64,000 bases of DNA, from the IMG/VR virus record IMGVR_UViG_3300045051_000720, positions 62,001-126,000 of that record. One strand, 5' to 3'. Position numbers and translations under genes: made by a program. How positions within the stretch are numbered: position 1 is the first letter of the stretch; every line of letters begins with the position of its first letter. The notes below the pieces were generated by a model that was not told the DNA's origin, did not search any database, and worked only from the letters and a program-made list of their open reading frames with translations. Below are positions 5,615-13,572 of the stretch, in pieces.

Positions 5615-5687
5615 ATCATAGGCCCGTTGGACAGCCTTGTCAACCACGATTTTGGTGTTTGACATCACCACCCAACATGGCTACTAT
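5615..5687. promoter_or_regulatory. Divergent sigma70-type promoter pair
   Basis: - strand TTGACA-N17-TATGAT (5643-5615); + strand TTGACA-N17-TACTAT (5659-5687). Confidence 0.75.
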
Positions 5688-5708
5688 ACATTCTTAGCGA
5701 CCTTCACT

Positions 5709-7100
5709 ATGGCCTTCGGCAATCACTCTCGCCCGCGCGGCACCCGTGTCAACGGGGCTTATGTTCCCAACCCCGGTATCGCGCGGTTGTGGGAGGATTT
5801 CAAGGCATATGCCTCACCCCTCGGGTTTACACCCGATCAATGGCGATTCACCGAGGCGTTCTTCACCGGTCGCAACGTGTGTTTGTTGGGTCGAGCGGGT
5901 ACAGGCAAATCGTATGTGCTCAAGGCGCTGTTCGAGTACCTGACCAAACAGAAAGTGTCGGTGGGACGCACGGCCACGACTGGCGTTTCGGCGTTTGGGA
6001 TAGGTGGTCAAACGATCCATTCGTGGGCGGGGTTGGGTCTTGCGGACGAACATTCCGAGGCTATCATCGCGTCCATCCAGAAGAAGGGCAAGGTCAAGGC
6101 GCGGATTCGCGCGGCGCAGGTGTTGTTCATTGACGAGGTCTCGATGGCCAAGGCCGATCTGATGGACAAGCTGGATGCGGTGTTGCGCTATTACCGTGAC
6201 TCGGGCGATCCTTGGGGCGGCGTGCAAGTCGTTCTCTGCGGGGACTTTTTGCAACTTGCACCAGTCTTCAAGGGTGACGAGACCCAAGCCTTCGCTTTCC
6301 ACTCGGCGGTCTGGGATGAGGGTAACGTGCGTACCATCGTGCTCCAAAAGGTCGTTCGCCAGCAGGGCGATAATACGCTTTTGTCCATTCTCAACGACGT
6401 GCGCGTTGGCAATACCGATTCGCTCCATCTGCTGGACAGCCGGGTGGGCGCGACATGGCCCGACAACGAAATCGAGGCGGTGAGAATCTTCTGCAAGAAC
6501 ATTGATGTCGACGGGTACAACCGCGAACGCATGGCACAGCTCACCAGCGCCGCGAAGACCTACACTGCGCGCGATTCGGGCGAGTCTTTTCACACGGACA
6601 CGTTCAACAAGAACTGCCCCGCGCCGCAGGTGTTGGAGCTGAAGGTGGGGGCGCAGGTGCTCCTTGTTGCCAATCTGGATGTCCAGAGCGGCTTTGTGAA
6701 CGGTAGCGTAGGCATCGTCAAGGCTTTTGGTCCGAACGGGGTGACGGTCAAGTTCACCCAAGGTACGACCGTCGTCGAGCATAACGAGTGGACCATCAAG
6801 GAGCAGGCGGTCGGGATGGATGGCAAGATCATCTATCGCACGGTCGCCACGCGCCGACAGATCCCGCTCAAGGTGTGCTATGCGGTGACTACTCACCGGG
6901 TCCAAGGCATGACGCTGGACCGTGCGATTATTGACATGACGGAGGCCTTCACGACCGGGCAGGTGTACACCAGCCTGAGCCGTGTGCGTGATTTGGAATC
7001 ACTCTCGCTTGCCAGCGCCATTCCCCACTCGGCGATTCGAGTCAATCCCGAGTGCGTGGCGTTCTACGAGGAAGCGGAGCGGGCGGAGAACCCGTTTTAA
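5709..7100 (+). CDS. PIF1-family SF1B DNA helicase
   Basis: GRAGTGKS, IDEVSM, GDFLQLAPV, LKVGAQV, QGMTLD and GQVYTSLSR motifs; start moved to the ATG downstream of the promoter. Confidence 0.93.
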   Translation: MAFGNHSRPRGTRVNGAYVPNPGIARLWEDFKAYASPLGFTPDQWRFTEAFFTGRNVCLLGRAGTGKSYVLKALFEYLTKQKVSVGRTATTGVSAFGIGGQTIHSWAGLGLADEHSEAIIASIQKKGKVKARIRAAQVLFIDEVSMAKADLMDKLDAVLRYYRDSGDPWGGVQVVLCGDFLQLAPVFKGDETQAFAFHSAVWDEGNVRTIVLQKVVRQQGDNTLLSILNDVRVGNTDSLHLLDSRVGATWPDNEIEAVRIFCKNIDVDGYNRERMAQLTSAAKTYTARDSGESFHTDTFNKNCPAPQVLELKVGAQVLLVANLDVQSGFVNGSVGIVKAFGPNGVTVKFTQGTTVVEHNEWTIKEQAVGMDGKIIYRTVATRRQIPLKVCYAVTTHRVQGMTLDRAIIDMTEAFTTGQVYTSLSRVRDLESLSLASAIPHSAIRVNPECVAFYEEAERAENPF

Positions 7101-7829
7101 CGCAGCAGCTCGAAACGCCCCTCCTCCAGCACTATCTCAGGCCGGTGACACTTGGCTCCAGTGCGATGGTCGGTGATGCGACGGTCGATCAGGTTGTAGG
7201 TTCTCACCTTCTCACCCCGCCCGGCTCCGCCGTAGGCCGCGCGGGTTTGCTGTCCCTTAACCCACTGCGCCAGTTTGCCTGCGAGACACTCGCGGGCGAC
7301 GCGGCGGTTTTGCCACTGGTCGCGCCCGTTGATGAAGACCTCAAGGCCGGTTGGGGTGTGGCGTAGACGGACGGCAGAGCAAACCTTGTTCGCGTTTTGC
7401 CCGCCTGCACCCTGTGAGCCGCGCTGGAAGGACTCCGCCAGATCACACTCGCGCATGGTGGTAGACCCTTGAGGCTTGAGCAAGGTCACGGTGACGGCCA
7501 CATAGCTAGTGTGACGCCTGCCACCGCGCTCAGTGTGAGGCACGCGTTGGACGCAGTGACCACCCGTCTCGGCGTCAAACAAATCGATGGCGCGCCGGTC
7601 ATGGATAGTAAAGGACCATTTGGATGGACCCTCCTCGCCCAGTTCGGGCGTTAGCCGATTGCGCGCGGCGTAGGCTAGGTAGGCCGACCAGAGCTGGCCA
7701 GCGAACGCTTTGCTGTCTTCCCCACCCTCGCCGGACTGAACCTCAACGAGAACCCCAACCGCGTCAAAGCGACTCCAGCCGTGCGACGTAGCCGTTAGAC
7801 TGCGGGACCGTGGTGCGGGTTGGGTTCAT
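7097..7829 (-). CDS. Class I peptide chain release factor lacking domain I, predicted +1 programmed frameshift (join 7829-7767, 7765-7097; ~243 aa)
   Basis: GAGGQNANK catalytic motif, QRVPHTE (RF1-type PxT), VEVQSGEGGEDS and RTYN; the 21-codon first ORF ends GGAG-TCG-CTT-TGA-C. Confidence 0.85.
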
Positions 7830-7836
7830 GAGGCGC

Positions 7837-7865
7837 ATCATATACACACGAGGCGAGAACGTCAA
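7837..7865 (-). promoter_or_regulatory. sigma70-type promoter, probably leaderless, for the release factor gene
   Basis: TTGACG-N17-TATGAT, 7 nt before ATG 7829. Confidence 0.65.
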
Positions 7866-7880
7866 GCACAAAAGCTGGCG

Positions 7881-8528
7881 TTATCCCAGAAACGGCTTCC
7901 ACACGGGGTGCTTTGGGTCCTCGCGTAGATGCACGATCGGCGGCACACTCGCCGGAGCCTTCGGGCGCGGGCGCGGTAGACCCGCTTCTTCGGGGGTCTT
8001 GTCGGCCTTCATGGTGTTGATCCGCTTGTCGCAGGTGACGGTATTCTCCCATGTATCGCGACCACCTCGCGAGCGCGGATCGATGTGGTCAACCGACAGT
8101 TCGGCGCGGGTCAGTTTGCGCTTGGTGTAGGCGCAGATGAAGTTGTCGCGGCGGTGCACGTTACCCGTGGACCAGCGCGTGGTGCGCATGGGGATCTTGT
8201 CGAAGTGAGCACAGATGACCACCAGTGGCGCGCGGATGCGGCCCTCGGGATTGTCCGCACTGCGTCCGACGCCAATCCACAGGTCGCCTTCACGCACGGG
8301 CAGCTTAACCCAGTTTTCCCATGCGGTCGGTTGGGCACTGACCAGTACGTGATCGCCATTCTCGTCAACGGCGGTCGTGATGTCGAGCGCGTAGCCCGGG
8401 TGGTCTCCGTCAGACTGGGAGTTGAGAAACACCACCGCGTCTCTCACACTCATCTGATCTACGGGGGACCACGAGCGGTTGAGCTTGAGGACGATGGTCT
8501 TGTCGAGGATGCTGAGGTGATCGGACAT
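7881..8528 (-). CDS. HNH endonuclease (McrA-like)
   Basis: RDNFICAY, SVDHIDPRSRGG..TWENTV.C...N..KADKTPEEAG. Confidence 0.88.
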   Translation of the reverse strand: MSDHLSILDKTIVLKLNRSWSPVDQMSVRDAVVFLNSQSDGDHPGYALDITTAVDENGDHVLVSAQPTAWENWVKLPVREGDLWIGVGRSADNPEGRIRAPLVVICAHFDKIPMRTTRWSTGNVHRRDNFICAYTKRKLTRAELSVDHIDPRSRGGRDTWENTVTCDKRINTMKADKTPEEAGLPRPRPKAPASVPPIVHLREDPKHPVWKPFLG

Positions 8529-8577
8529 GGTGAGTGAGGGGCTAGAGTTAGGGTCTTTGTGTGATCTGATGGGAAAA

Positions 8578-8665
8578 TGGCGGAAGCGAGAGGGCACGAT
8601 CCCCAACGCACGAGTCGTCCTGCGGTGTAGCACACCGTGGCAGTCGCCTGACTGCTTTCGCTTCC
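8578..8665 (-). tRNA. tRNA-Ser(GCT)
   Basis: Cloverleaf, long variable arm, G73-CCA. Confidence 0.8.
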
Positions 8666-8666
8666 G

Positions 8667-8755
8667 TGGCGGTAACAAGTGGGGTTCAACCACTGTGCAA
8701 TGAAGCACACTCTGGGTTTCGGGTCCAGTCGAGGAAAACGTCCTCAGTTGCTACC
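8667..8755 (-). tRNA. tRNA-Ser(CGA)
   Basis: Cloverleaf, long variable arm, GCCA end. Confidence 0.75.
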
Positions 8756-8842
8756 GGCGGAGTGGTGCCGTACTGCCCGGCTGCCGGTTGCCCGACACAA
8801 CGCTTTCCAAGCGCCGTCCACCTCTAGGTGGCCCAACCCTCC
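8756..8842 (-). tRNA. tRNA-Ser(GGA)
   Basis: GGCGC-TTGGAAA-GCGTT anticodon arm, long variable arm, bulged acceptor stem. Confidence 0.72.
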
Positions 8843-8875
8843 AAAAAGATACAGACCCGAGCGGGGTCTGTAAAG

Positions 8876-8969
8876 TGGCGGTGAGTTGAGATCTTGCGTC
8901 CCAAGGCGGGGTTGGCCCTCCTCCATTCGCTTTCAAGGCGGCGGCAGCGCCTCGGCTGCTTAACTCACC
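8876..8969 (-). tRNA. tRNA-Ser(TGA)
   Basis: CTTGAAA loop, long variable arm, GCCA end. Confidence 0.8.
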
Positions 8970-8973
8970 AAAG

Positions 8974-9049
8974 TGGTGCGGACACCCCGAGTTGCACGGG
9001 GACTATCCCTCGTTAGGACCGAGGTTGACTGTCTGTTGCCGATGTCCGC
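8974..9049 (-). tRNA. tRNA-Arg(CCT)
   Basis: CCTCG-GTCCTAA-CGAGG arm, ACCA end. Confidence 0.82.
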
Positions 9050-9537
9050 GAAAAATACTTGTCGCGCTCGACGGTGCGGCGACCCAGCTCTGCGCTGAGG
9101 AAGGCTGTCATCTTGCCGTTGTGACTCATGAGCTTGTCGGCCCACCCCACCATCAGCTGGTTGGGGCACACAAACGGTCCGCGCGCGTTGACGATCAGTT
9201 GGTAGGCATCAGAGTAAGGTATCCTGTGGTGGACCAGCCAGATGAAGGCTGCTGCGCTTGACCGCGATACGCCTGCGAAGCAGTGAAAGAGGATGGACTG
9301 GTCGGGGCTGGTTTGGGCGTAGACACCCAGTAGCCGCCGTATCATCGCCTCTGTGGGAGCGAGAGGGTTGGACGAGTTGCCCGTATCAGCGAACACAAAT
9401 GAGTGGAGAGTGAAGGGGTACTTGAACGCTCGGATGTCGGGGCCGGGTTGGTGGACCTCGTGGAAAGAGATGATGTGGTCCAGCAGAACCGTCGCGAAGG
9501 CAGGAACCTCGGAGACGCCACAAATAGCGAAGGGCAT
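9013..9537 (-). CDS. Cys-dependent (dual-specificity / tyrosine) phosphatase
   Basis: HCFAGVSRS P-loop, FAD acid loop and PN motif; own promoter at 9543-9571. Confidence 0.9.
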   Translation of the reverse strand: MPFAICGVSEVPAFATVLLDHIISFHEVHQPGPDIRAFKYPFTLHSFVFADTGNSSNPLAPTEAMIRRLLGVYAQTSPDQSILFHCFAGVSRSSAAAFIWLVHHRIPYSDAYQLIVNARGPFVCPNQLMVGWADKLMSHNGKMTAFLSAELGRRTVERDKYFSRTSATDSQPRS

Positions 9538-9572
9538 AGCCGATGCTAGTCCGTAATGAGGGCGCTGTCAAG

Positions 9573-9665
9573 TGGCGCGAACGGCAGGATTCTCACCCAC
9601 ATCAGGGCCGAGCGGCCCTTCACCTGCGTTCGAAGCGCAGTTGACGCTATTATGTCGGCGTTCGC
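9573..9665 (-). tRNA. tRNA-Arg(TCG), long variable arm
   Basis: CTGCG-CTTCGAA-CGCAG arm, GCCA end. Confidence 0.8.
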
Positions 9666-9666
9666 A

Positions 9667-9755
9667 TGGTCTCGACGGCGAGAGTTGCACTCGCAGATTG
9701 GCTTGCGCCAGACGGTTTAGAGGACCGTTGCCTTGTCTACCCGAGCCCCGTCGAG
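9667..9755 (-). tRNA. tRNA-Arg(TCT), long variable arm
   Basis: ACGGT-CCTCTAA-ACCGT arm, ACCA end. Confidence 0.75.
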
Positions 9756-9760
9756 GGAAA

Positions 9761-9837
9761 TGGCGCGAGACCGGGGATTCAAACCCCGACTGATCCTCGT
9801 TCGCAACGAGGGCGACTATTCGGTTGCCGAGTCTCGC
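9761..9837 (-). tRNA. tRNA-Arg(GCG)
   Basis: CCTCG-TTGCGAA-CGAGG arm, GCCA end. Confidence 0.82.
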
Positions 9838-9932
9838 AAAGAGATTGCACCGTCCCCAGTCGATGCGTCGCTGGGGAGCAGGACACCAGTAGGACATCGC
9901 ATTAGTCCACCCGGAGATTCCACGGTGCAAAT

Positions 9933-10007
9933 TGGGGCGCACGACCGGATCTACCCCGGCCCTCCAAGCGTCACAGGCTCGGGTGCTTCTACTACACTAC
10001 GTGCGCC
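9933..10007 (-). tRNA. tRNA-His(GTG)
   Basis: G-1:C73 pair, CTGTGAC loop. Confidence 0.85.
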
Positions 10008-10013
10008 ATAAGG

Positions 10014-10089
10014 TGGAGCTTCAGTAGGGGTTCTCACCCTCCTCTCTCGGATACAAGCCGAGGCCATCGAATGTCTATGGGTCTGAAGC
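10014..10089 (-). tRNA. tRNA-Thr(TGT)
   Basis: CTCGG-CTTGTAT-CCGAG arm, CCA end. Confidence 0.82.
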
Positions 10090-10093
10090 GAAA

Positions 10094-10167
10094 TGGAGCC
10101 GAGGACCGGTAACGCTCCGGTGTCTATCGTTTACGAAACGATGGCTCTGCTTTTGAGCTACCAAGGC
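10094..10167 (-). tRNA. tRNA-Thr(CGT)
   Basis: ATCGT-TTCGTAA-ACGAT arm, CCA end. Confidence 0.85.
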
Positions 10168-10171
10168 AAAG

Positions 10172-10247
10172 TGGTGGTCCCGGGAGAGCAACGATCCTCC
10201 ACGTCACGCCTATAAAGCGCGCAGTCTGCCGATTAACTTACAGGACC
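10172..10247 (-). tRNA. tRNA-Ile(TAT)
   Basis: CGCGC-TTTATAG-GCGTG arm, ACCA end. Confidence 0.78.
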
Positions 10248-10361
10248 AAAAGGAGGGCATCGGAATCATCTCGGCGCGCAGTGTGCACCTTACGATCCGT
10301 CAGCCCTATAGGTGGTTTGTTTACGAGACGGTGCGTTTAACGACACAGGGCGCAAACGAAA

Positions 10362-10481
10362 TGGTTCCACGGCTCAGGTCGATCAACCCCACCTTTGGCC
10401 AGCCACCTCAGCGAGGTTTGGTAGCTCGTTAGGCCCTTCGCTTCTGACGCCTCCAGTTGGATTGCCCTCAGTGACCGTGAA
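10362..10481 (-). ncRNA. Oversized tRNA-like RNA (120 nt)
   Basis: TTCACGG/CCGTGGA acceptor-like stem plus ACCA; internal arms non-canonical. Confidence 0.45.
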
Positions 10482-10484
10482 AGA

Positions 10485-10570
10485 TGGTGGGCGTGGAGGG
10501 ATGCGAGCCCTCAAGGACAACGGAATTTGAACCCGTCGCTTCTACCAGTTTCGCTTTCGTCCACACGCCC
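10485..10570 (-). tRNA. tRNA-Leu(CAA), atypical architecture
   Basis: ACGGG-TTCAAAT-TCCGT arm; extra GGACG/TGTCC pairing. Confidence 0.8.
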
Positions 10571-10572
10571 GA

Positions 10573-10655
10573 TCGGCATGGTGGGATTCGGACCCACAGG
10601 GGATAGCGCATTTTAAGTGCGCCGGTTGTCGCCAGTTTCCCTTATCCACATGCCG
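10573..10655 (-). tRNA. tRNA-Leu(TAA), atypical architecture
   Basis: GCGCA-CTTAAAA-TGCGC arm; extra GGATA/TATCC pairing; CCA not encoded. Confidence 0.8.
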
Positions 10656-10661
10656 GTAAGA

Positions 10662-10736
10662 TGGTGGGACCATGGAGCCAACGCACTCCAATCTCCGCGC
10701 TGAGAACGCGGCGAACTACTCTTATTCGATGATCCC
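10662..10736 (-). tRNA. tRNA-Glu(CTC)
   Basis: CCGCG-TTCTCAG-CGCGG arm, ACCA end. Confidence 0.82.
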
Positions 10737-10737
10737 G

Positions 10738-10820
10738 TAGGCGTGGAGAGATTCGGACTCTCAAGGACACGTGATCCTAAGTCACGCGGTTCTGCCAATT
10801 TCCCTTCCGTCCACACGCCC
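10738..10820 (-). tRNA. tRNA-Leu(TAG), atypical architecture
   Basis: CGTGA-CTTAGGA-TCACG arm; extra GGACG/TGTCC pairing. Confidence 0.8.
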
Positions 10821-10826
10821 ATAAAA

Positions 10827-10917
10827 TGGTGGCCTCGGGGGGAGTCGGACCCCCACGCTACTATGATTTCGCTCGCGAATCTCATTCGCGCATGTCTACC
10901 AGTTCCATCACGAGGCC
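10827..10917 (-). tRNA. tRNA-Leu(GAG)
   Basis: Class II cloverleaf, ATGAGAT loop, ACCA end. Confidence 0.85.
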
Positions 10918-10994
10918 GAGGTCCCAGTCGGAGTTGCACCGACCCTGTTCGTCATTACCAATGACGCGCCGTGGCTACACTCGGCATTGGGACC
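10918..10994 (-). tRNA. tRNA-Thr(GGT)
   Basis: CGTCA-TTGGTAA-TGACG arm. Confidence 0.82.
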
Positions 10995-10999
10995 ATAAA

Positions 11000-11076
11000 T
11001 GGGGGCTCAGGTCAGATTTGCACTGACGACCGTCTCCGTATGGGGGAGCCGCGCTAGCTAGCTGCGCCACTGAGCC
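11000..11076 (-). tRNA. tRNA-Met(CAT) elongator (Ile2 not excluded)
   Basis: CTCC-CCCATAC-GGAG arm, CCA end. Confidence 0.72.
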
Positions 11077-11077
11077 G

Positions 11078-11153
11078 TGGTGGTCCCGTCGAGATTCGCA
11101 CTCGCCTCATCCGATTAAGAGTCGGAGTCCTCGCCTATCTAGGAGTCGAGACC
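11078..11153 (-). tRNA. tRNA-Lys(CTT)
   Basis: TCCGA-CTCTTAA-TCGGA arm, ACCA end. Confidence 0.87.
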
Positions 11154-11161
11154 GTAAAGTA

Positions 11162-11452
11162 TTCAACCGCGTAGCCGCGTTTCTGTTGCCGGGCCATCCC
11201 GACCGACATCCATTTCTCTCACCCACGGTCACCCGTGAACGGGTATCGTTTATAGACACCTGCACCAACCACGCCCTGCTTGACGGCCAGAACTAGCCTC
11301 GGGCTCCATTTGGCTTGCTGGTATCGTGTGGTTATCGCGAGTGTCTACCGACGTAACATCGTCGGGACTGCTCTCCCATCGACTTCTGTCCAGACGCGAA
11401 CTTGACCTCTACGCACGCATCGAGTGCGCGGCAGCGGATGTCTGCGGTTGAA
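11162..11452 (-). ncRNA. rnpB: RNase P RNA (compact, ~290 nt)
   Basis: P1 TTCAACCGC/GCGGTTGAA; P2 GACATCC/GGATGTC; CR-I GAGGTCAAGTTCGCGT pairing with CR-V AACAGAAACGCGGCTA (P4); CAGCAAGCCAAAT; GAGAGAAATG. Confidence 0.85.
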
Positions 11453-11455
11453 AGA

Positions 11456-11530
11456 TGGTGGAGGTACCGAGTGCCGCCCTCGGGCTTGAGTCATGCCATG
11501 ACCCTGTGCTGCTGTTATCACTATACCCCC
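11456..11530 (-). tRNA. tRNA-Ala(GGC)
   Basis: G3:U70 pair, ATGGCAT loop, ACCA end. Confidence 0.87.
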
Positions 11531-11604
11531 GCTGCCTCGGAGCGAATTGCACGCCCACCTAACACCTTCAGAGGGTGTCGGACTAGCTGTTATCCCACGA
11601 GGCA
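11531..11604 (-). tRNA. tRNA-Gln(CTG)
   Basis: U1-A72, ACACC-CTCTGAA-GGTGT arm. Confidence 0.85.
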
Positions 11605-11638
11605 AAAGTGATAGGGGTGACAAAACTGACCCGTCATT

Positions 11639-11709
11639 GGGTCAGTAGTGTAGTGGTAGCACGTCCGCCTGACTGGCGGGGGGCGCGGGTTCAAATCCCG
11701 TCTGATCCA
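11639..11709 (+). tRNA. tRNA-Val(GAC), inverted relative to the array
   Basis: Canonical GTGT-AGTGGTA-GCAC D arm and GGTTCAAATCC T loop on the + strand. Confidence 0.72.
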
Positions 11710-11715
11710 TTTAAT

Positions 11716-11791
11716 TGGCTGCCCACCACGGATGACAGCCGTGACCCTCGCCTTCAAAGGGCGGTATGCTTGACGTTTACATCAATGGGCA
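11716..11791 (-). tRNA. tRNA-Gln(TTG)
   Basis: CTTTGAA loop, GCCA end. Confidence 0.82.
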
Positions 11792-11798
11792 ATGAGAG

Positions 11799-11876
11799 TG
11801 GTCGGCGTGGAGGGATTCGCACCCCCGATCCTTCGCTTCCGGAGCGAGCATGTTGGCTAGGCTACACCACACGCCG
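11799..11876 (-). tRNA. tRNA-Pro(CGG)
   Basis: C1-G72, TCCGGAA loop, ACCA end. Confidence 0.85.
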
Positions 11877-11977
11877 ATATTGCGGGCCGGTTATCCATCC
11901 GGCGGCACCCGGCTTGATGGTGAGCAAGACGGAGACTCTGGAATTGGCGTGATTTTATGGCTCACGCCGCCGCAAAA

Positions 11978-12055
11978 TGGTCCTCGCGGCAGGCTTCGCT
12001 CCTGCGGCCTTCTGCATGTCGTGCAGCCGCTCTAACTGGGCTGAGCTACGCGAGG
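11978..12055 (-). tRNA. tRNA-Val(GAC)
   Basis: CTGC-ACGACAT-GCAG arm, ACCA end. Confidence 0.82.
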
Positions 12056-12060
12056 GAAAG

Positions 12061-12138
12061 TGGTCGGGCCAGTTGGATTCGCACCAACGATCTCATGCTC
12101 CCCGAGCATGCGCGATGACTAGGCTACGCTATGACCCG
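12061..12138 (-). tRNA. tRNA-Pro(GGG)
   Basis: CATGC-TCGGGGA-GCATG arm, ACCA end. Confidence 0.87.
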
Positions 12139-12237
12139 ATTGGCAGATACCGTCTGTTACTCCCACCGTGGTGTCCCGTCTGCCGCGGGGCTTTAGGTGG
12201 TGTTTGGGTAATCCAAACGTCTCGTGAACGGCTAAGA

Positions 12238-12336
12238 TGGCTGTACCGGTAGGAGCCGCCCCTACACCGCCGCAGGTCATGCGTACGGGCTCGCTTAACA
12301 GGCGAGTGCAACGAACGTGCTATTTGCCTCGGTACA
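12238..12336 (-). tRNA. tRNA-Asn(GTT), long variable arm
   Basis: CTCGC-CTGTTAA-GCGAG arm, GCCA end, 99 nt. Confidence 0.78.
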
Positions 12337-12342
12337 ATAAAA

Positions 12343-12418
12343 TGGTCGTCGCTGAGGGACTCGCACCCCCGAACCTCTGCGTGTAGGGCAGGTACCGTAG
12401 CTGCTGGGTCAAGCGACG
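12343..12418 (-). tRNA. tRNA-Val(TAC)
   Basis: CCTACAC loop, ACCA end. Confidence 0.82.
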
Positions 12419-12422
12419 AAAG

Positions 12423-12499
12423 TGGCGCGATAGATGGGTGCTGCCCCCACTTGTCTCGGCATAGACAGTGCCGCGAGCATGCTGTTGCTCTTCTACCGC
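12423..12499 (-). tRNA. tRNA-Asp(GTC)
   Basis: CGGCA-CTGTCTA-TGCCG arm, GCCA end. Confidence 0.85.
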
Positions 12500-12501
12500 G
12501 T

Positions 12502-12573
12502 ACGGATGGAGGGACTCGCACCCCCGTTATGTCCGGTCCCAAACCGGAAGCCATTGCTGCTAGGCGACATCCG
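12502..12573 (-). tRNA. tRNA-Pro(TGG)
   Basis: TCCGG-TTTGGGA-CCGGA arm. Confidence 0.8.
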
Positions 12574-12580
12574 TGTGAAA

Positions 12581-12653
12581 TGGATGCAGGGCCGAGGAAT
12601 CGCACCCGGTCAGGGCGACGGGTATGAACCGCGCTTGGTCTAACCTCCCTGCG
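12581..12653 (-). tRNA. Initiator-like tRNA-fMet(CAT) with reduced D arm
   Basis: C1:A72 mismatch, TTCATAC loop, CCA end. Confidence 0.7.
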
Positions 12654-12660
12654 TAAAGTG

Positions 12661-12810
12661 TTCCCTTTGTAGGCGTGCTCCAACGCCTCGTTGTTTGTCA
12701 AAATGGCCGGTGCTCTACCGTTGAGCTAGCATCCTCCTTGCGAAGGACCGCAGGTGTCGAACCTGTATCTCCGGCAAGTGTTACCTTGCGGGCTTTTGAC
12801 CTCTAGGGAA
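12661..12810 (-). ncRNA. YrlA-like Y RNA (circularly permuted tRNA-mimic domain on a long stem)
   Basis: T arm (CAGGTTCGACACCTG), then closed acceptor stem, then D arm (GCTCAACGGTAGAGC), enclosed by GCCGG/CCGGC, GTCAAAA/TTTTGAC and TTCCCT/AGGGAA stems. Confidence 0.72.
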
Positions 12811-12812
12811 AG

Positions 12813-12885
12813 TGGTGGAGCCCCGGGCATCGCAGCCCAACGACAGCCGGATTTTCAGTCCAGCCCGTGCACTCGCACTGACTCC
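12813..12885 (-). tRNA. tRNA-Phe(GAA)
   Basis: CTGGA-CTGAAAA-TCCGG arm, ACCA end; short D arm. Confidence 0.72.
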
Positions 12886-12943
12886 GGAGCCATCGTTAGG
12901 TCCGCCGATGGCGCAGGCGGTCTCGGGTTATTGACGAGGAAGA

Positions 12944-13020
12944 TGGGACGGACGGTGGGTAGCGCGCCCACATGAAGCCGGATTTGGAGTTCGGTGCCTT
13001 ACTTGTCGAGCCACGTCCGT
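12944..13020 (-). tRNA. tRNA-Trp(CCA)
   Basis: CTCCAAA loop, CCA end. Confidence 0.8.
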
Positions 13021-13195
13021 ATGAAAAGGTGGAGCGAAGAGATGGTCATTTATTCACCGGGCTGGGACCAATCCACGAGGTGCCCGATCCAGATGTCTCC
13101 TGCCTCGCTCCGTTTGGAGACCAACGAGTGATGTGGTGTCAGGTTCCTGTAGGCTTCACTGACACCGACCCGCGGCGTGAACCGCGAGGTGAAGA

Positions 13196-13269
13196 TGGTG
13201 GTCAAGTCGGGTGCTGCCCCCGCGTCTAACGGTTATCGACCGTTGGCTCTACTGTTGAGCTACATGACC
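13196..13269 (-). tRNA. tRNA-Ile(GAT)
   Basis: AACGG-TCGATAA-CCGTT arm, ACCA end. Confidence 0.87.
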
Positions 13270-13399
13270 AAAATTGCTGTCGCGGTCAACCCGCGTTTCG
13301 GCTCAGCTTGGCCGTTTGCAAAATGGCGACTACGTTAACCAGTCTTGACCGGAGGCGTGCTTGCGGGCGCGTCGTAGCCCGTTGGGTATTAGCCCAAAG

Positions 13400-13491
13400 T
13401 GGTGGACCCGGAGGGAGTTGCACCCCCGACGCCCCGTTAGGGGTCCAGATTTACAGTCTGGTGCAGCCATCTGACAGCTACCTCGTGGTCC
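13400..13491 (-). tRNA. tRNA-Tyr(GTA)
   Basis: CCAGA-CTGTAAA-TCTGG arm, long variable arm, ACCA end. Confidence 0.85.
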
Positions 13492-13497
13492 GAAAAA

Positions 13498-13572
13498 TGG
13501 AGCGTCGTGCGGGACTCCCACCCGCGTGTGTCTGCTTGGAAGGCAGATGCCTTGGTTCTCGGCCAACGACGC
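13498..13572 (-). tRNA. tRNA-Gly(TCC)
   Basis: TCTGC-CTTCCAA-GCAGA arm, TCCA end. Confidence 0.87.

What the first reader, a model, noticed from the sequence alone, without database searches (positions are those of the whole stretch)
7097..7865. RF1-motif release factor expressed through an RF2-type UGA-sensing +1 frameshift
SEEN: a promoter places a leaderless ATG at 7829, and the frame runs 21 codons to ...CTG GAG TCG CTT TGA C (7776-7763). The conserved release-factor N-terminal segment (VLVEVQSGEGGEDSKAFA...YLAYA) is in the +1 frame. That frame has no ATG/GTG/TTG until 7582, so the ORF track truncates the protein. Shifting at CTT-T gives about 243 aa with GGQ and QRVPHTE. KNOWN: CUU-UGA-C with an SD-like element 3 nt upstream is the prfB autoregulatory site; PxT marks RF1 (UAA/UAG) and SPF marks RF2. 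INFERENCE: the phage makes this domain-I-less factor only when host UGA termination is weak. The sensor (RF2) and motif (RF1) mismatch suggests relaxed stop specificity, a ribosome-rescue role or cross-regulation. It would be a second translation-status sensor at the distal end of the tRNA region.
Basis: partly seen in the sequence, partly recalled or inferred. Interest (0 to 1): 0.86.

Follow-up and report, generated by a model that had tools for sequence, protein, structure and literature searches.

The report
Phage release factor needing a frameshift
A large phage encodes a shortened RF1-like translation-termination factor that can only be made if the ribosome slips one base at a stop codon, a control device known until now only from the bacterial RF2 gene; relatives carry it with all three stop codons and sometimes twice in a row.

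Summary
On the minus strand a 21-codon ORF (ATG 7829) ends in GGAG-TCG-CTT-TGA-C (7776-7763). The +1 frame (7765-7100, stop 7099-7097) encodes 222 aa with the C-terminal half of the PCRF domain plus the RF-1 domain, GGQ and a PHT tripeptide. That frame has no start codon before TTG 7582.

The protein groups with RF1, not RF2, PrfH or ArfB. It lacks domain 1. Its model (pLDDT 92.9) superposes on ribosome-bound RF1 (TM 0.85).

The frameshift is not an assembly error. Four close relatives from other assemblies keep TTGGAG-NNN-CTT-TGA-CGC and a 20-21 codon leader. Of 44 non-redundant short phage-type RF loci, 30 carry CTT-stop in the right frame and place, against 1 of 139 bacterial RF1 genes.

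In the wider family the cassette stop is TGA (25), TAG (10) or TAA (4). Eight loci carry two cassettes in tandem. Bacterial prfB never uses TAG.

The most likely mechanism is a prfB-type +1 frameshift whose efficiency rises when UGA termination (host RF2) is slow. Whether this is cross-sensing or true autoregulation is untested. I found no description of it in the searchable literature. I rate it a new variant of a known kind, of high interest.

The parts
7837..7865 (-). Promoter-like site: TTGACG (7865-7860), 17-nt spacer, TATGAT (7842-7837)
   Evidence: matches 10 of 12 positions; 2 such sites in the 1.9-kb stretch scanned (6900-8800) against 0.3 expected. Function not shown. -10-like boxes also lie 4-7 nt before the leader ATG in relatives L004 and L222.
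7764..7829 (-). ORF0 leader: ATG plus 20 further sense codons, ending in the in-frame TGA 7766-7764
   Evidence: Relatives L219, L220 and L222 have leaders of 20-21 codons ending in (Y)VARLESL or HLESL. No SD precedes the ATG, so initiation is leaderless or SD-independent (inferred).
7773..7776 (-). SD-like GGAG, 3 nt (TCG 7772-7770) upstream of the shift codon
   Evidence: Same 3-nt spacing as in E. coli prfB (PMC12421855, PMC5009743). In 39 cassettes from 31 non-redundant loci, positions -10 to -7 are G30, G29, A16/G16 and G24 of 39.
7763..7769 (-). Shift site CTT-TGA-C: slippery CUU_U, stop UGA, weak-context C at +4
   Evidence: CTT is invariant in 39 of 39 family cassettes and +4 is C in 28 of 39.
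7097..7765 (-). +1-frame body of the release factor: 222 codons (7765-7100) plus TAA 7099-7097
   Evidence: Pfam PCRF (profile positions 98-194 only) 70.8 bits and RF-1 62.2 bits, both above cut-off. AF2 pLDDT 92.9. Foldseek best matches are ribosome-bound RF1, TM 0.85.
7532..7540 (-). PHT tripeptide (the PxT position of RF1), within QRVPHTE
   Evidence: Bacterial RF1 has T here in 18 of 18 sequences. The phage clade has T in 24, N in 7, S in 4 and L in 1.
7397..7405 (-). GGQ catalytic motif
   Evidence: invariant in 87 family sequences.
7580..7582 (-). TTG, the first start codon in the +1 frame (start of the 161-aa ORF that a mechanical ORF list gives)
   Evidence: Starting here would remove 61 conserved residues of the codon-reading domain.

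Best explanation
This is a phage gene for a bacterial-type class-I release factor that consists of domains 2, 3 and 4 only. It has RF1-type decoding elements: Gln-Arg-Val-Pro-His-Thr, then His-Thr-Ser.

Proposed mechanism:
1. Ribosomes start at ATG 7829, probably on a leaderless or SD-less mRNA, and read 21 codons.
2. They pause with peptidyl-tRNA-Leu on CUU in the P site and UGA-C in the A site.
3. Either host RF2 terminates and releases a 21-aa peptide, or the tRNA slips from CUU to UUU, helped by GGAG pairing with the 16S rRNA tail 3 nt upstream.
4. After slipping, translation continues in the +1 frame to give the 243-aa factor.

Output should therefore rise when UGA termination is slow. 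By its motifs the product should read UAA and UAG and not UGA. For this phage the circuit is then most simply a sensor of host RF2 capacity that adds RF3-independent RF1-type activity, rather than a closed autoregulatory loop.

Shown here: the sequence anatomy, the family-wide conservation of the cassette, the RF1 affinity and the fold. Inferred: that frameshifting occurs, its dependence on RF2, the codon specificity, and the lack of RF3 dependence.
For: Anatomy.

The +1 frame has no start, while 61 residues upstream of the first TTG are conserved and fold with confidence.

Nearest relatives come from independent assemblies (74-78% aa identity, same HNH - RF - Pif1-helicase synteny). They keep TTGGAG-NNN-CTT-TGA-CGC and a 20-21 codon leader.

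Across the family, 30 of 44 non-redundant short RF loci have CTT-stop in the correct frame within 120 nt of the GxGG motif, against 1 of 139 bacterial RF1 genes. The cassette consensus is GGRG-TGT-CTT-TRR-C. Of 32 called proteins with long N-termini, 28 read xF[DE] or xFS, the +1-frame footprint of CTT-TGA or CTT-TAG.

RF1 affinity: NCBIfam prfA 149 bits against prfB 109; PDB RF1 109 bits against RF2 71; the tree places the short clade with RF1; decoding motifs are.

RF1 without domain 1 still releases peptides in vitro and works in vivo, with codon specificity unaffected by removing the domain; the domain is needed to stimulate RF3 (PMC1586002, citing Mora et al.).

The prfB mechanism is described in PMC12421855 and PMC5009743.

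The gene's own stop is TAA, which both host factors read, in 39 of 44 family loci. Flanking genes use TAA 43% of the time. This fits a gene expressed when one factor is limiting.

The window uses the standard code: TGA 46, TAA 23, TAG 9 of 78 ORFs, and no suppressor tRNA.
Against: There is no expression, proteomic or reporter data.

The SD-like element is only 4 nt, and the phage's own genes show little SD use.

The host is unknown. Some hosts frameshift poorly at this motif, such as Mycobacterium smegmatis (PMC12421855).

If the product cannot read UGA, it does not relieve the shortage it senses, yet TGA ends 59% of the window's ORFs.

In relatives the cassette stop changes freely between TGA, TAG and TAA, even between sister sequences. 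This is awkward for a sensor dedicated to one host factor.
Confidence: 0.65

Rival explanations
1. True autoregulation by a broad-specificity factor. The phage factor reads UGA as well as UAA and UAG, so it terminates at its own cassette and closes a prfB-like negative feedback loop. The cassette stop can then drift among the three codons.
For: The cassette stop varies within one protein family: TGA 25, TAG 10, TAA 4. Examples are TAG against TAA between bodies 99% identical (L020, L021), and mixed tandem cassettes such as TAG+TGA (L013) and TAA+TGA (L218, L032).

In bacterial prfB the cassette stop is always one that the product reads, and TAG occurs in none of 8,164 genomes (PMC12421855).

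The Thr of PxT is invariant in 18 of 18 bacterial RF1 sequences but is T, N, S or L in the phage clade. The helix-5 tip is GEGGxD rather than GTGG[DE]E.
Against: The window's protein keeps the RF1-type Thr, Gln and His-Thr-Ser.

An RF1-type third-base pocket accepts A or G. Combined with relaxed reading of the second base it would also read UGG (Trp), which should be toxic (my inference from RF1 and RF2 structures).

There is no clear correlation between the tripeptide and the cassette stop.
Confidence: 0.2
2. Fixed attenuator. The cassette only sets a low constitutive expression level for a factor that is harmful in excess, and does not respond meaningfully to termination capacity. Tandem cassettes simply lower the level further.
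For: RF2 over-expression is toxic in B. subtilis (PMC12421855). Any stop codon would serve as an attenuator, which fits the TGA/TAG/TAA variation.
Against: A weak start site would do the same job more cheaply. The full prfB-style stimulator set (SD-like element at exact 3-nt spacing, CUU_U, +4 C) is conserved over deep divergence. At such a site, competition with release factors cannot be avoided.
Confidence: 0.1
3. No frameshift. The gene is a pseudogene or carries an assembly error, or only the 161-aa product from TTG 7582 is made.
For: A mechanical ORF list gives only the 161-aa ORF. Many database gene calls for relatives are truncated in the same way: 41 of 120.
Against: The same interruption with the same motif is found in independent assemblies and in dozens of divergent contigs. 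The 61 residues upstream of TTG are conserved, match PCRF (E = 1.7e-19) and fold with pLDDT above 90. A 161-aa product would lack the helix-5 tip of the decoding domain.
Confidence: 0.03

Closest known systems
Bacterial prfB (RF2) autoregulatory +1 programmed frameshift
   Same: A short leader ORF (21 codons here, 25 in E. coli), an SD-like element exactly 3 nt before CUU, the slippery CUU_U, an in-frame UGA followed by C, and a functional body entirely in the +1 frame with no start of its own.
   Different: The encoded protein is RF1-like (PxT rather than SPF) and lacks domain 1. It is phage-borne. In the family the cassette stop can be UAG or UAA. UAG was found in none of 8,164 bacterial prfB cassettes (PMC12421855). 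The cassette can also be duplicated in tandem. Closed-loop autoregulation is not expected from the motif.
Bacterial RF1 (prfA)
   Same: The fold of domains 2-4 (TM 0.85 to ribosome-bound RF1), GGQ, QRVPxTE, HTS, and the best HMM and PDB sequence scores.
   Different: There is no domain 1 of about 110 residues. The body after the GxGG motif is about 210 aa against about 240. The helix-5 tip is GEGGxD. It scores far below the prfA equivalog cut-off (149 against 400). No frameshift has been described for prfA (PMC12421855, PMC5009743).
PrfH (RFH), the RF homologue lacking domain 1 that pairs with RtcB2
   Same: It lacks domain 1 and retains GGQ.
   Different: The relationship is distant: TIGR03072 45 bits against a cut-off of 167, PDB 39 bits, TM 0.59. 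There is no RtcB neighbour. The decoding motifs here are RF1-like, whereas PrfH has its own.
Release factors already reported in huge, Lak, crAss-like, Jade and Agate phages (PMC7162821; bioRxiv 10.1101/2021.08.26.457843)
   Same: They are phage-encoded RF1 or RF2 genes within translation-related gene sets.
   Different: Those reports concern the presence of the genes and a role in stop-codon recoding. No frameshift cassette or loss of domain 1 is mentioned in the passages I read. The window phage uses the standard code.
Mimivirus/Megavirus eRF1-type release factor gene (PMC3521657)
   Same: It is a viral release-factor gene whose translation needs recoding at internal stops (one frameshift and one readthrough), interpreted as autoregulatory.
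   Different: It is a eukaryotic/archaeal-type factor in a eukaryotic virus, with different shift signals. The two are not homologous at the cassette level.

Membership tests
Bacterial-type class-I release factor | PCRF and RF-1 domains above Pfam gathering scores | tested here: met
   PCRF 70.8 bits (cut-off 24), RF-1 62.2 bits (cut-off 35).
Bacterial-type class-I release factor | GGQ catalytic motif | tested here: met
   GGQ at 7405-7397. Invariant in 87 family sequences.
Bacterial-type class-I release factor | Fold of domains 2-4 | tested here: met
   AF2 pLDDT 92.9. TM 0.85 and rmsd 2.9 Å to ribosome-bound T. thermophilus RF1.
RF1 (prfA) | PxT tripeptide and RF1-type Gln and Thr of the third-base pocket | tested here: met
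   QRVPHTE…HTS. The roles of these residues come from published RF1 structures (my knowledge).
RF1 (prfA) | N-terminal domain 1 | tested here: not met
   The PCRF match covers only profile positions 98-194. Only 21 + 3 residues precede the first strand.
RF1 (prfA) | NCBIfam equivalog score | tested here: not met
   149.1 and 138.6 bits against cut-offs of 400 and 423.
RF1 (prfA) | Closer to RF1 than to RF2 | tested here: met
   On the RF2-rooted tree the short phage clade (SH-aLRT 88) lies among bacterial RF1.
RF1 (prfA) | Release at UAA and UAG only | not testable with these tools
   Needs release assays.
RF2 (prfB) protein | SPF tripeptide and prfB model score | tested here: not met
   PHT in place of SPF. 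108.6 bits against a cut-off of 370.
prfB-type +1 frameshift cassette | CUU_U slippery codon, in-frame UGA, C at +4 | tested here: met
   7769-7763.
prfB-type +1 frameshift cassette | SD-like element 3 nt upstream of CUU | tested here: met
   GGAG 7776-7773. Only 4 nt long. Conserved as TTGGAG in the nearest relatives.
prfB-type +1 frameshift cassette | Short leader ORF, and a body with no start codon of its own | tested here: met
prfB-type +1 frameshift cassette | Conservation of the cassette among homologues | tested here: met
   30 of 44 phage-type loci against 1 of 139 bacterial RF1. 39 cassettes aligned.
prfB-type +1 frameshift cassette | Frameshift product actually made, with efficiency dependent on RF level | not testable with these tools
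   Needs a reporter assay or mass spectrometry.
prfB-type +1 frameshift cassette | The product recognises the cassette's own stop (autoregulation) | tested here: inconclusive
   The motif predicts UAA/UAG reading while the cassette stop is UGA. The family uses all three stops.
PrfH | TIGR03072 score and an upstream RtcB2 partner | tested here: not met
   45.3 bits against 166.65. The neighbours are an HNH endonuclease and a Pif1/Dda-like helicase.
ArfB / ICT1 | GGQ domain with a C-terminal tail and no codon-reading domain | tested here: not met
   35.3 bits against 100. Domains 2 and 4 are present and conserved.

The most novel reading that the evidence does not exclude
A phage-specific lineage of RF1-derived factors lacking domain 1 has taken over the prfB-type frameshift cassette. 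It has diversified the cassette into UGA, UAG and UAA versions, tandem double cassettes, and possibly in-frame-stop versions. The reason would be that these factors read all three stop codons and so autoregulate at any of them. That would make them the first natural omnipotent bacterial-type release factor.
Probability: 0.2. Interest if true: 0.95.

Novelty: new variant of a known kind. Interest (0 to 1): 0.8.

Why it matters
The prfB frameshift is the textbook case of a gene that measures the activity of its own product. It has been considered unique to RF2 and tied to UGA. A survey of 8,164 bacterial cassettes found no UAG, and a major review states that the RF1/UAG counterpart is unknown.

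Here the same device sits on an RF1-like protein in phages. It occurs with all three stop codons and sometimes twice in series. This gives a natural set of variants for asking what a stop-codon frameshift sensor really measures: RF1, RF2 or overall termination capacity.

It also shows that large phages monitor and supplement host termination. It offers compact RF3-independent release factors and tunable RF-responsive switches for synthetic biology. On the practical side, gene callers truncate or miss these genes, as in 41 of 120 database entries here.

Tried and rejected
- **DNA similarity to 50,697 phage records:** none. The best protein-level hit was a 595-kb uncultured phage at 41% identity.
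- **Genome and metagenome scans:** The loci returned were almost all full-length bacterial RF1, at 41% identity or less. I used them as control and outgroup. They do not prove the family is absent from bacteria. Four short ATG-started relatives (L056, L062, L138, L156) turned up on MAG and metagenome contigs.
- **Stop-codon reassignment as an explanation:** rejected for the window. The standard code gives 85% coverage, all three stops are used, and there is no suppressor tRNA. Family flanks also use all three stops.
- **A stimulatory RNA structure at the site:** none found (z = +1.0).
- **PrfH or ArfB identity:** rejected.
- **Start at TTG 7582:** rejected.
- **Correlation between the PxT-position residue and the cassette stop:** no convincing pattern. 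There is only a weak trend, confounded by phylogeny, for N/S types to carry TGA.
- **SD usage of the window's genes:** inconclusive. 22% of first starts have an SD-like 4-mer, against 19% background.
- **Literature:** six completed full-text searches (a seventh call failed on a syntax error) and nine papers read. I found no description of a frameshift in a phage RF gene or in any RF1-type gene. The library is not exhaustive.
- Only the two pieces were used.
Full report
**1. What is in the window**

On the minus strand an ATG at 7829 opens a frame of 21 sense codons that ends at TGA 7766-7764. The last bases read GGAG (7776-7773), TCG, CTT (7769-7767), TGA, C (7763).

The +1 frame starting at GAC 7765 is open for 222 codons to TAA 7099-7097. 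That frame is open for only 31 codons upstream of its GEGG motif. It contains no ATG, GTG or TTG before TTG 7582. A mechanical ORF list therefore shows only a 161-aa fragment.

The 14-nt motif GGAGNNNCTTTGAC occurs once in 64 kb, against 0.02 expected. The bare heptamer is not unusual. The case therefore rests on position and conservation, not on motif rarity.

A promoter-like site (TTGACG, 17 nt, TATGAT; 7865-7837) ends 8 nt before ATG 7829. No SD precedes the ATG. A leaderless start is plausible: relatives L004 and L222 also have -10-like boxes 4-7 nt before their leader ATG. It remains unproven. Two more in-frame ATGs (7841, 7838) lie inside the -10 box.

**2. What the +1 frame encodes**

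The 222-aa piece matches Pfam PCRF, but only the C-terminal half of the profile (positions 98-194), and the RF-1 domain. Both are above their cut-offs.

Scores against release-factor families and solved structures:

| Family | NCBIfam (bits) | Best PDB sequence match (bits) |
|---|---|---|
| RF1 / prfA | 149 | 109 |
| RF2 / prfB | 109 | 71 |
| PrfH | 45 | 39 |
| ArfB | 35 | not among the listed matches |

All NCBIfam scores are far below the equivalog cut-offs; PDB scores are.

An AlphaFold model built on 87 family sequences has mean pLDDT 92.9. It superposes best on ribosome-bound RF1 from T. thermophilus and E. coli and on mitochondrial mtRF1a (TM 0.83-0.85). The match to PrfH is only 0.59.

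The decoding elements are of the RF1 type: Q-R-V-P-H-T-E followed by H-T-S, where RF2 has V-R-K-S-P-F-D. GGQ is present.

The product is therefore a class-I release factor made of domains 2-4 with an RF1-type 'anticodon' and no domain 1. Published work summarised in PMC1586002 reports three things about RF1 lacking domain 1. It still releases peptides in vitro and functions in vivo. Removing the domain does not change codon specificity. The domain is needed to stimulate RF3.

**3. Is the frameshift real?**

The window is part of IMG/VR contig UViG_3300045051_000720, 219 kb. It carries phage-type replication genes and a 14-gene tRNA block. It has no DNA-level relative among 50,697 phage records.

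A protein search found a large family of short (about 210-250 aa) release factors in metagenomes. 21 clusters at the 50% identity level score better than the first full-length RF1.

The three nearest relatives (74-78% aa identity) lie on contigs of two other assemblies, and a fourth locus (L221) is the same sequence as L220 in a separate read-set assembly. They share the synteny HNH endonuclease - RF - convergent Pif1-like helicase. All keep TTGGAG-NNN-CTT-TGA-CGC and a 20-21 codon ATG leader whose peptide ends in (Y)VARLESL or HLESL.

I collected 54 IMG/VR loci and some others and reduced them to 44 non-redundant short RF loci. Of these, 30 carry CTT followed by a stop in the frame from which +1 leads into the RF frame, within 120 nt of the GxGG motif. 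The same test scores 1 of 139 full-length bacterial RF1 genes.

The 39 cassettes give the consensus GG[A/G]G - TGT - CTT - T[G/A][A/G] - C. CTT is invariant and +4 is C in 28 of 39. Outside the window's own clade, most leaders have a canonical SD and ATG 8-22 codons upstream.

Among the 120 family representatives listed by the search, 41 gene calls are truncated at the N-terminus. Of the 32 with long N-termini, 28 read xF[D/E] or xFS, the +1-frame footprint of CTT-TGA or CTT-TAG.

An assembly error or a pseudogene cannot explain this pattern. No RNA structure accompanies the site.

**4. What the family adds**

A tree rooted on RF2 places the short phage factors with bacterial RF1. The short clade has SH-aLRT 88. 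All cassette-bearing genes fall in one well-supported subclade of 36 rows (support 99). The window sits in a fully supported group in which every member has a TGA cassette.

Across the family the cassette stop is not fixed: TGA 25, TAG 10, TAA 4. Switches occur between close relatives. L020 (TAG) and L021 (TAA) have RF bodies 99% identical but unrelated leaders. L017 (TGA) is sister to L020 (TAG).

Eight non-redundant loci carry two cassettes in series. One of them is the published 595-kb phage LR756511 (L218). In each, a canonical SD and ATG is followed by 9-18 codons ending in L-stop, then 11-23 codons ending in L-stop, then the RF body.

| Locus | Distal stop + proximal stop |
|---|---|
| L218, L032 | TAA + TGA |
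| L013 | TAG + TGA |
| L009, L023 | TGA + TGA |
| L015 | TAA + TAG |
| L033, L045 | TAG + TAG |

By contrast, a 2025 survey of 8,164 bacterial prfB cassettes found 98.6% TGA, the rest TAA and no TAG. It found no programmed frameshift in prfA (PMC12421855). The 2016 recoding review states that a counterpart involving UAG and RF1 genes is unknown (PMC5009743).

Release factors have been noted in huge, Lak, crAss-like, Jade and Agate phages (PMC7162821; bioRxiv 10.1101/2021.08.26.457843). No frameshift is mentioned in the passages I read. A frameshift plus a readthrough is known for the eRF1-type gene of mimiviruses (PMC3521657). My searches found no description of the phage cassette. The library is not exhaustive.

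**5. How it most likely works**

By direct analogy with prfB (mechanism in PMC12421855 and PMC5009743), a ribosome that has read the leader pauses with tRNA-Leu on CUU and UGA-C in the A site. Host RF2 may terminate there. Otherwise the tRNA re-pairs on UUU, aided by GGAG pairing with the anti-SD at 3-nt spacing, and the factor is made.

Output should therefore be inversely related to UGA termination capacity. The window uses the standard code and ends 59% of its ORFs with TGA, so RF2 demand is high.

By its motifs the product should read UAA and UAG. The simplest reading for this phage is a cross-sensor. When RF2 is limiting, the phage adds an RF3-independent RF1-type factor. That factor could take over UAA and UAG stops and free RF2 for UGA.

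The gene's own stop is TAA, readable by either host factor, in 39 of 44 family loci, against 43% in flanking genes. This fits a gene that must terminate properly when one factor is scarce.

I put about 0.9 on 'RF1-like factor made through a +1 frameshift' and about 0.5 on the cross-sensing logic. The overall figure is 0.65.

**6. Rivals**

(a) Broad-specificity factor with true autoregulation (0.2). The free drift of the cassette stop favours this. So does the relaxed Thr of PxT: T24, N7, S4, L1 in the phage clade, against T in 18 of 18 bacterial RF1. Against it, the window keeps Thr. Also, an RF1-type third-base pocket combined with relaxed second-base reading should hit UGG as well.

(b) A fixed attenuator with no regulatory meaning (0.1).

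(c) No frameshift, a pseudogene, or only a 161-aa product (0.03). Sections 2 and 3 contradict this.

**7. Classification**

It works like the prfB cassette and meets every sequence-level feature of that cassette. The protein is not RF2. It is RF1-like but fails the RF1 equivalog test because domain 1 is absent. It is not PrfH or ArfB. I rate it a new variant of a known kind.

The finding is of high interest to the recoding and phage-translation fields. The interest lies mainly in the family-level picture (UAG and UAA cassettes, tandem cassettes) that this window led to.

Noticed in passing
L218 (LR756511.1, about 413870-414700), L013, L009, L015, L023, L032, L033, L045: Tandem double +1 cassettes precede the RF body. 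Two successive CTT-stop sites lie 11-23 codons apart, in the combinations TAA+TGA, TAG+TGA, TGA+TGA, TAA+TAG and TAG+TAG. Most have a GGGGG or GGAGG element 3 nt upstream.
   Followed up: yes
L015, L020, L025, L031, L033, L035, L045 (TAG); L021, L015, L032, L218 (TAA): Cassettes built on CTT-TAG and CTT-TAA occupy the same position as CTT-TGA. TAG is reported as absent from all 8,164 bacterial prfB cassettes surveyed.
   Followed up: yes
L010 around 2480-2500; possibly L029 around 2480-2500: The RF frame is preceded by an in-frame TGA rather than a frameshift (ATG AAG AAT CAG TGA AGA…). This suggests a readthrough-type sensor or local recoding. L029's flanks look like standard code. L029 could instead start at a TTG 7 codons before GEGG.
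   Followed up: partly
L046, L047, L051, L052 (TGA) and L022 (TAG), about 95-100 nt after the match start (2501): A single in-frame stop lies inside domain 2, at or next to the position where bacterial RF1 has Trp. These genes start with a plain ATG and have no N-terminal cassette. Their flanks appear to use the standard code. This is possibly a third kind of termination sensor.
   Followed up: partly
L019, about 28 nt before its GEGG motif: This locus has a 7-codon leader ending in GTT-TGA-A, a non-CTT shift codon.
   Followed up: no
L020 and L021: The RF bodies are 99% identical, but the leader sequences are unrelated and the cassette stops differ (TAG against TAA). This suggests that leaders are exchanged by recombination.
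   Followed up: partly
window 7097-7099 and 43 other family loci: The RF gene's own terminator is TAA in 39 of 44 loci and never TAG. Flanking genes use TAA 43%, TGA 37.5% and TAG 19% of the time.
   Followed up: partly
window 10827-10917 (-); L027 2369-2451: The phage encodes tRNA-Leu(GAG), the tRNA that reads the CUU shift codon. In L027 the same tRNA species lies immediately upstream of the RF gene.
   Followed up: no
window 8578-13572: The block holds 14 tRNA genes, 13 on the minus strand upstream of the HNH and RF genes. The plus-strand tRNA-Val(GAC) at 11638-11710 duplicates the anticodon of the minus-strand one at 11978-12055. 16 of 42 related loci also have tRNA genes within about 3 kb of the RF gene, and none has a suppressor anticodon.
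   Followed up: partly
window 7881-8708 (-): This HNH endonuclease ORF has a listed 5' end that overlaps tRNA-Ser(GCT) at 8578-8665. Its true start is probably further downstream. An HNH gene sits at the same place in relative L219.
   Followed up: no
window 5637-7100 (+): A Pif1/Dda-like helicase gene converges on the RF gene and overlaps its stop codon by 4 nt. The arrangement is conserved in L219 and L220.
   Followed up: no
window 9016-9537 (-): A small ORF with a weak dual-specificity phosphatase (DSPc) match sits among the tRNA genes. A DSPc-like gene is also found upstream of the RF in L219 and L220.
   Followed up: no
P0124 (477 aa): A much longer protein matches the RF body in two stretches at 39% identity. 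It may be a fusion or a mis-called gene.
   Followed up: no
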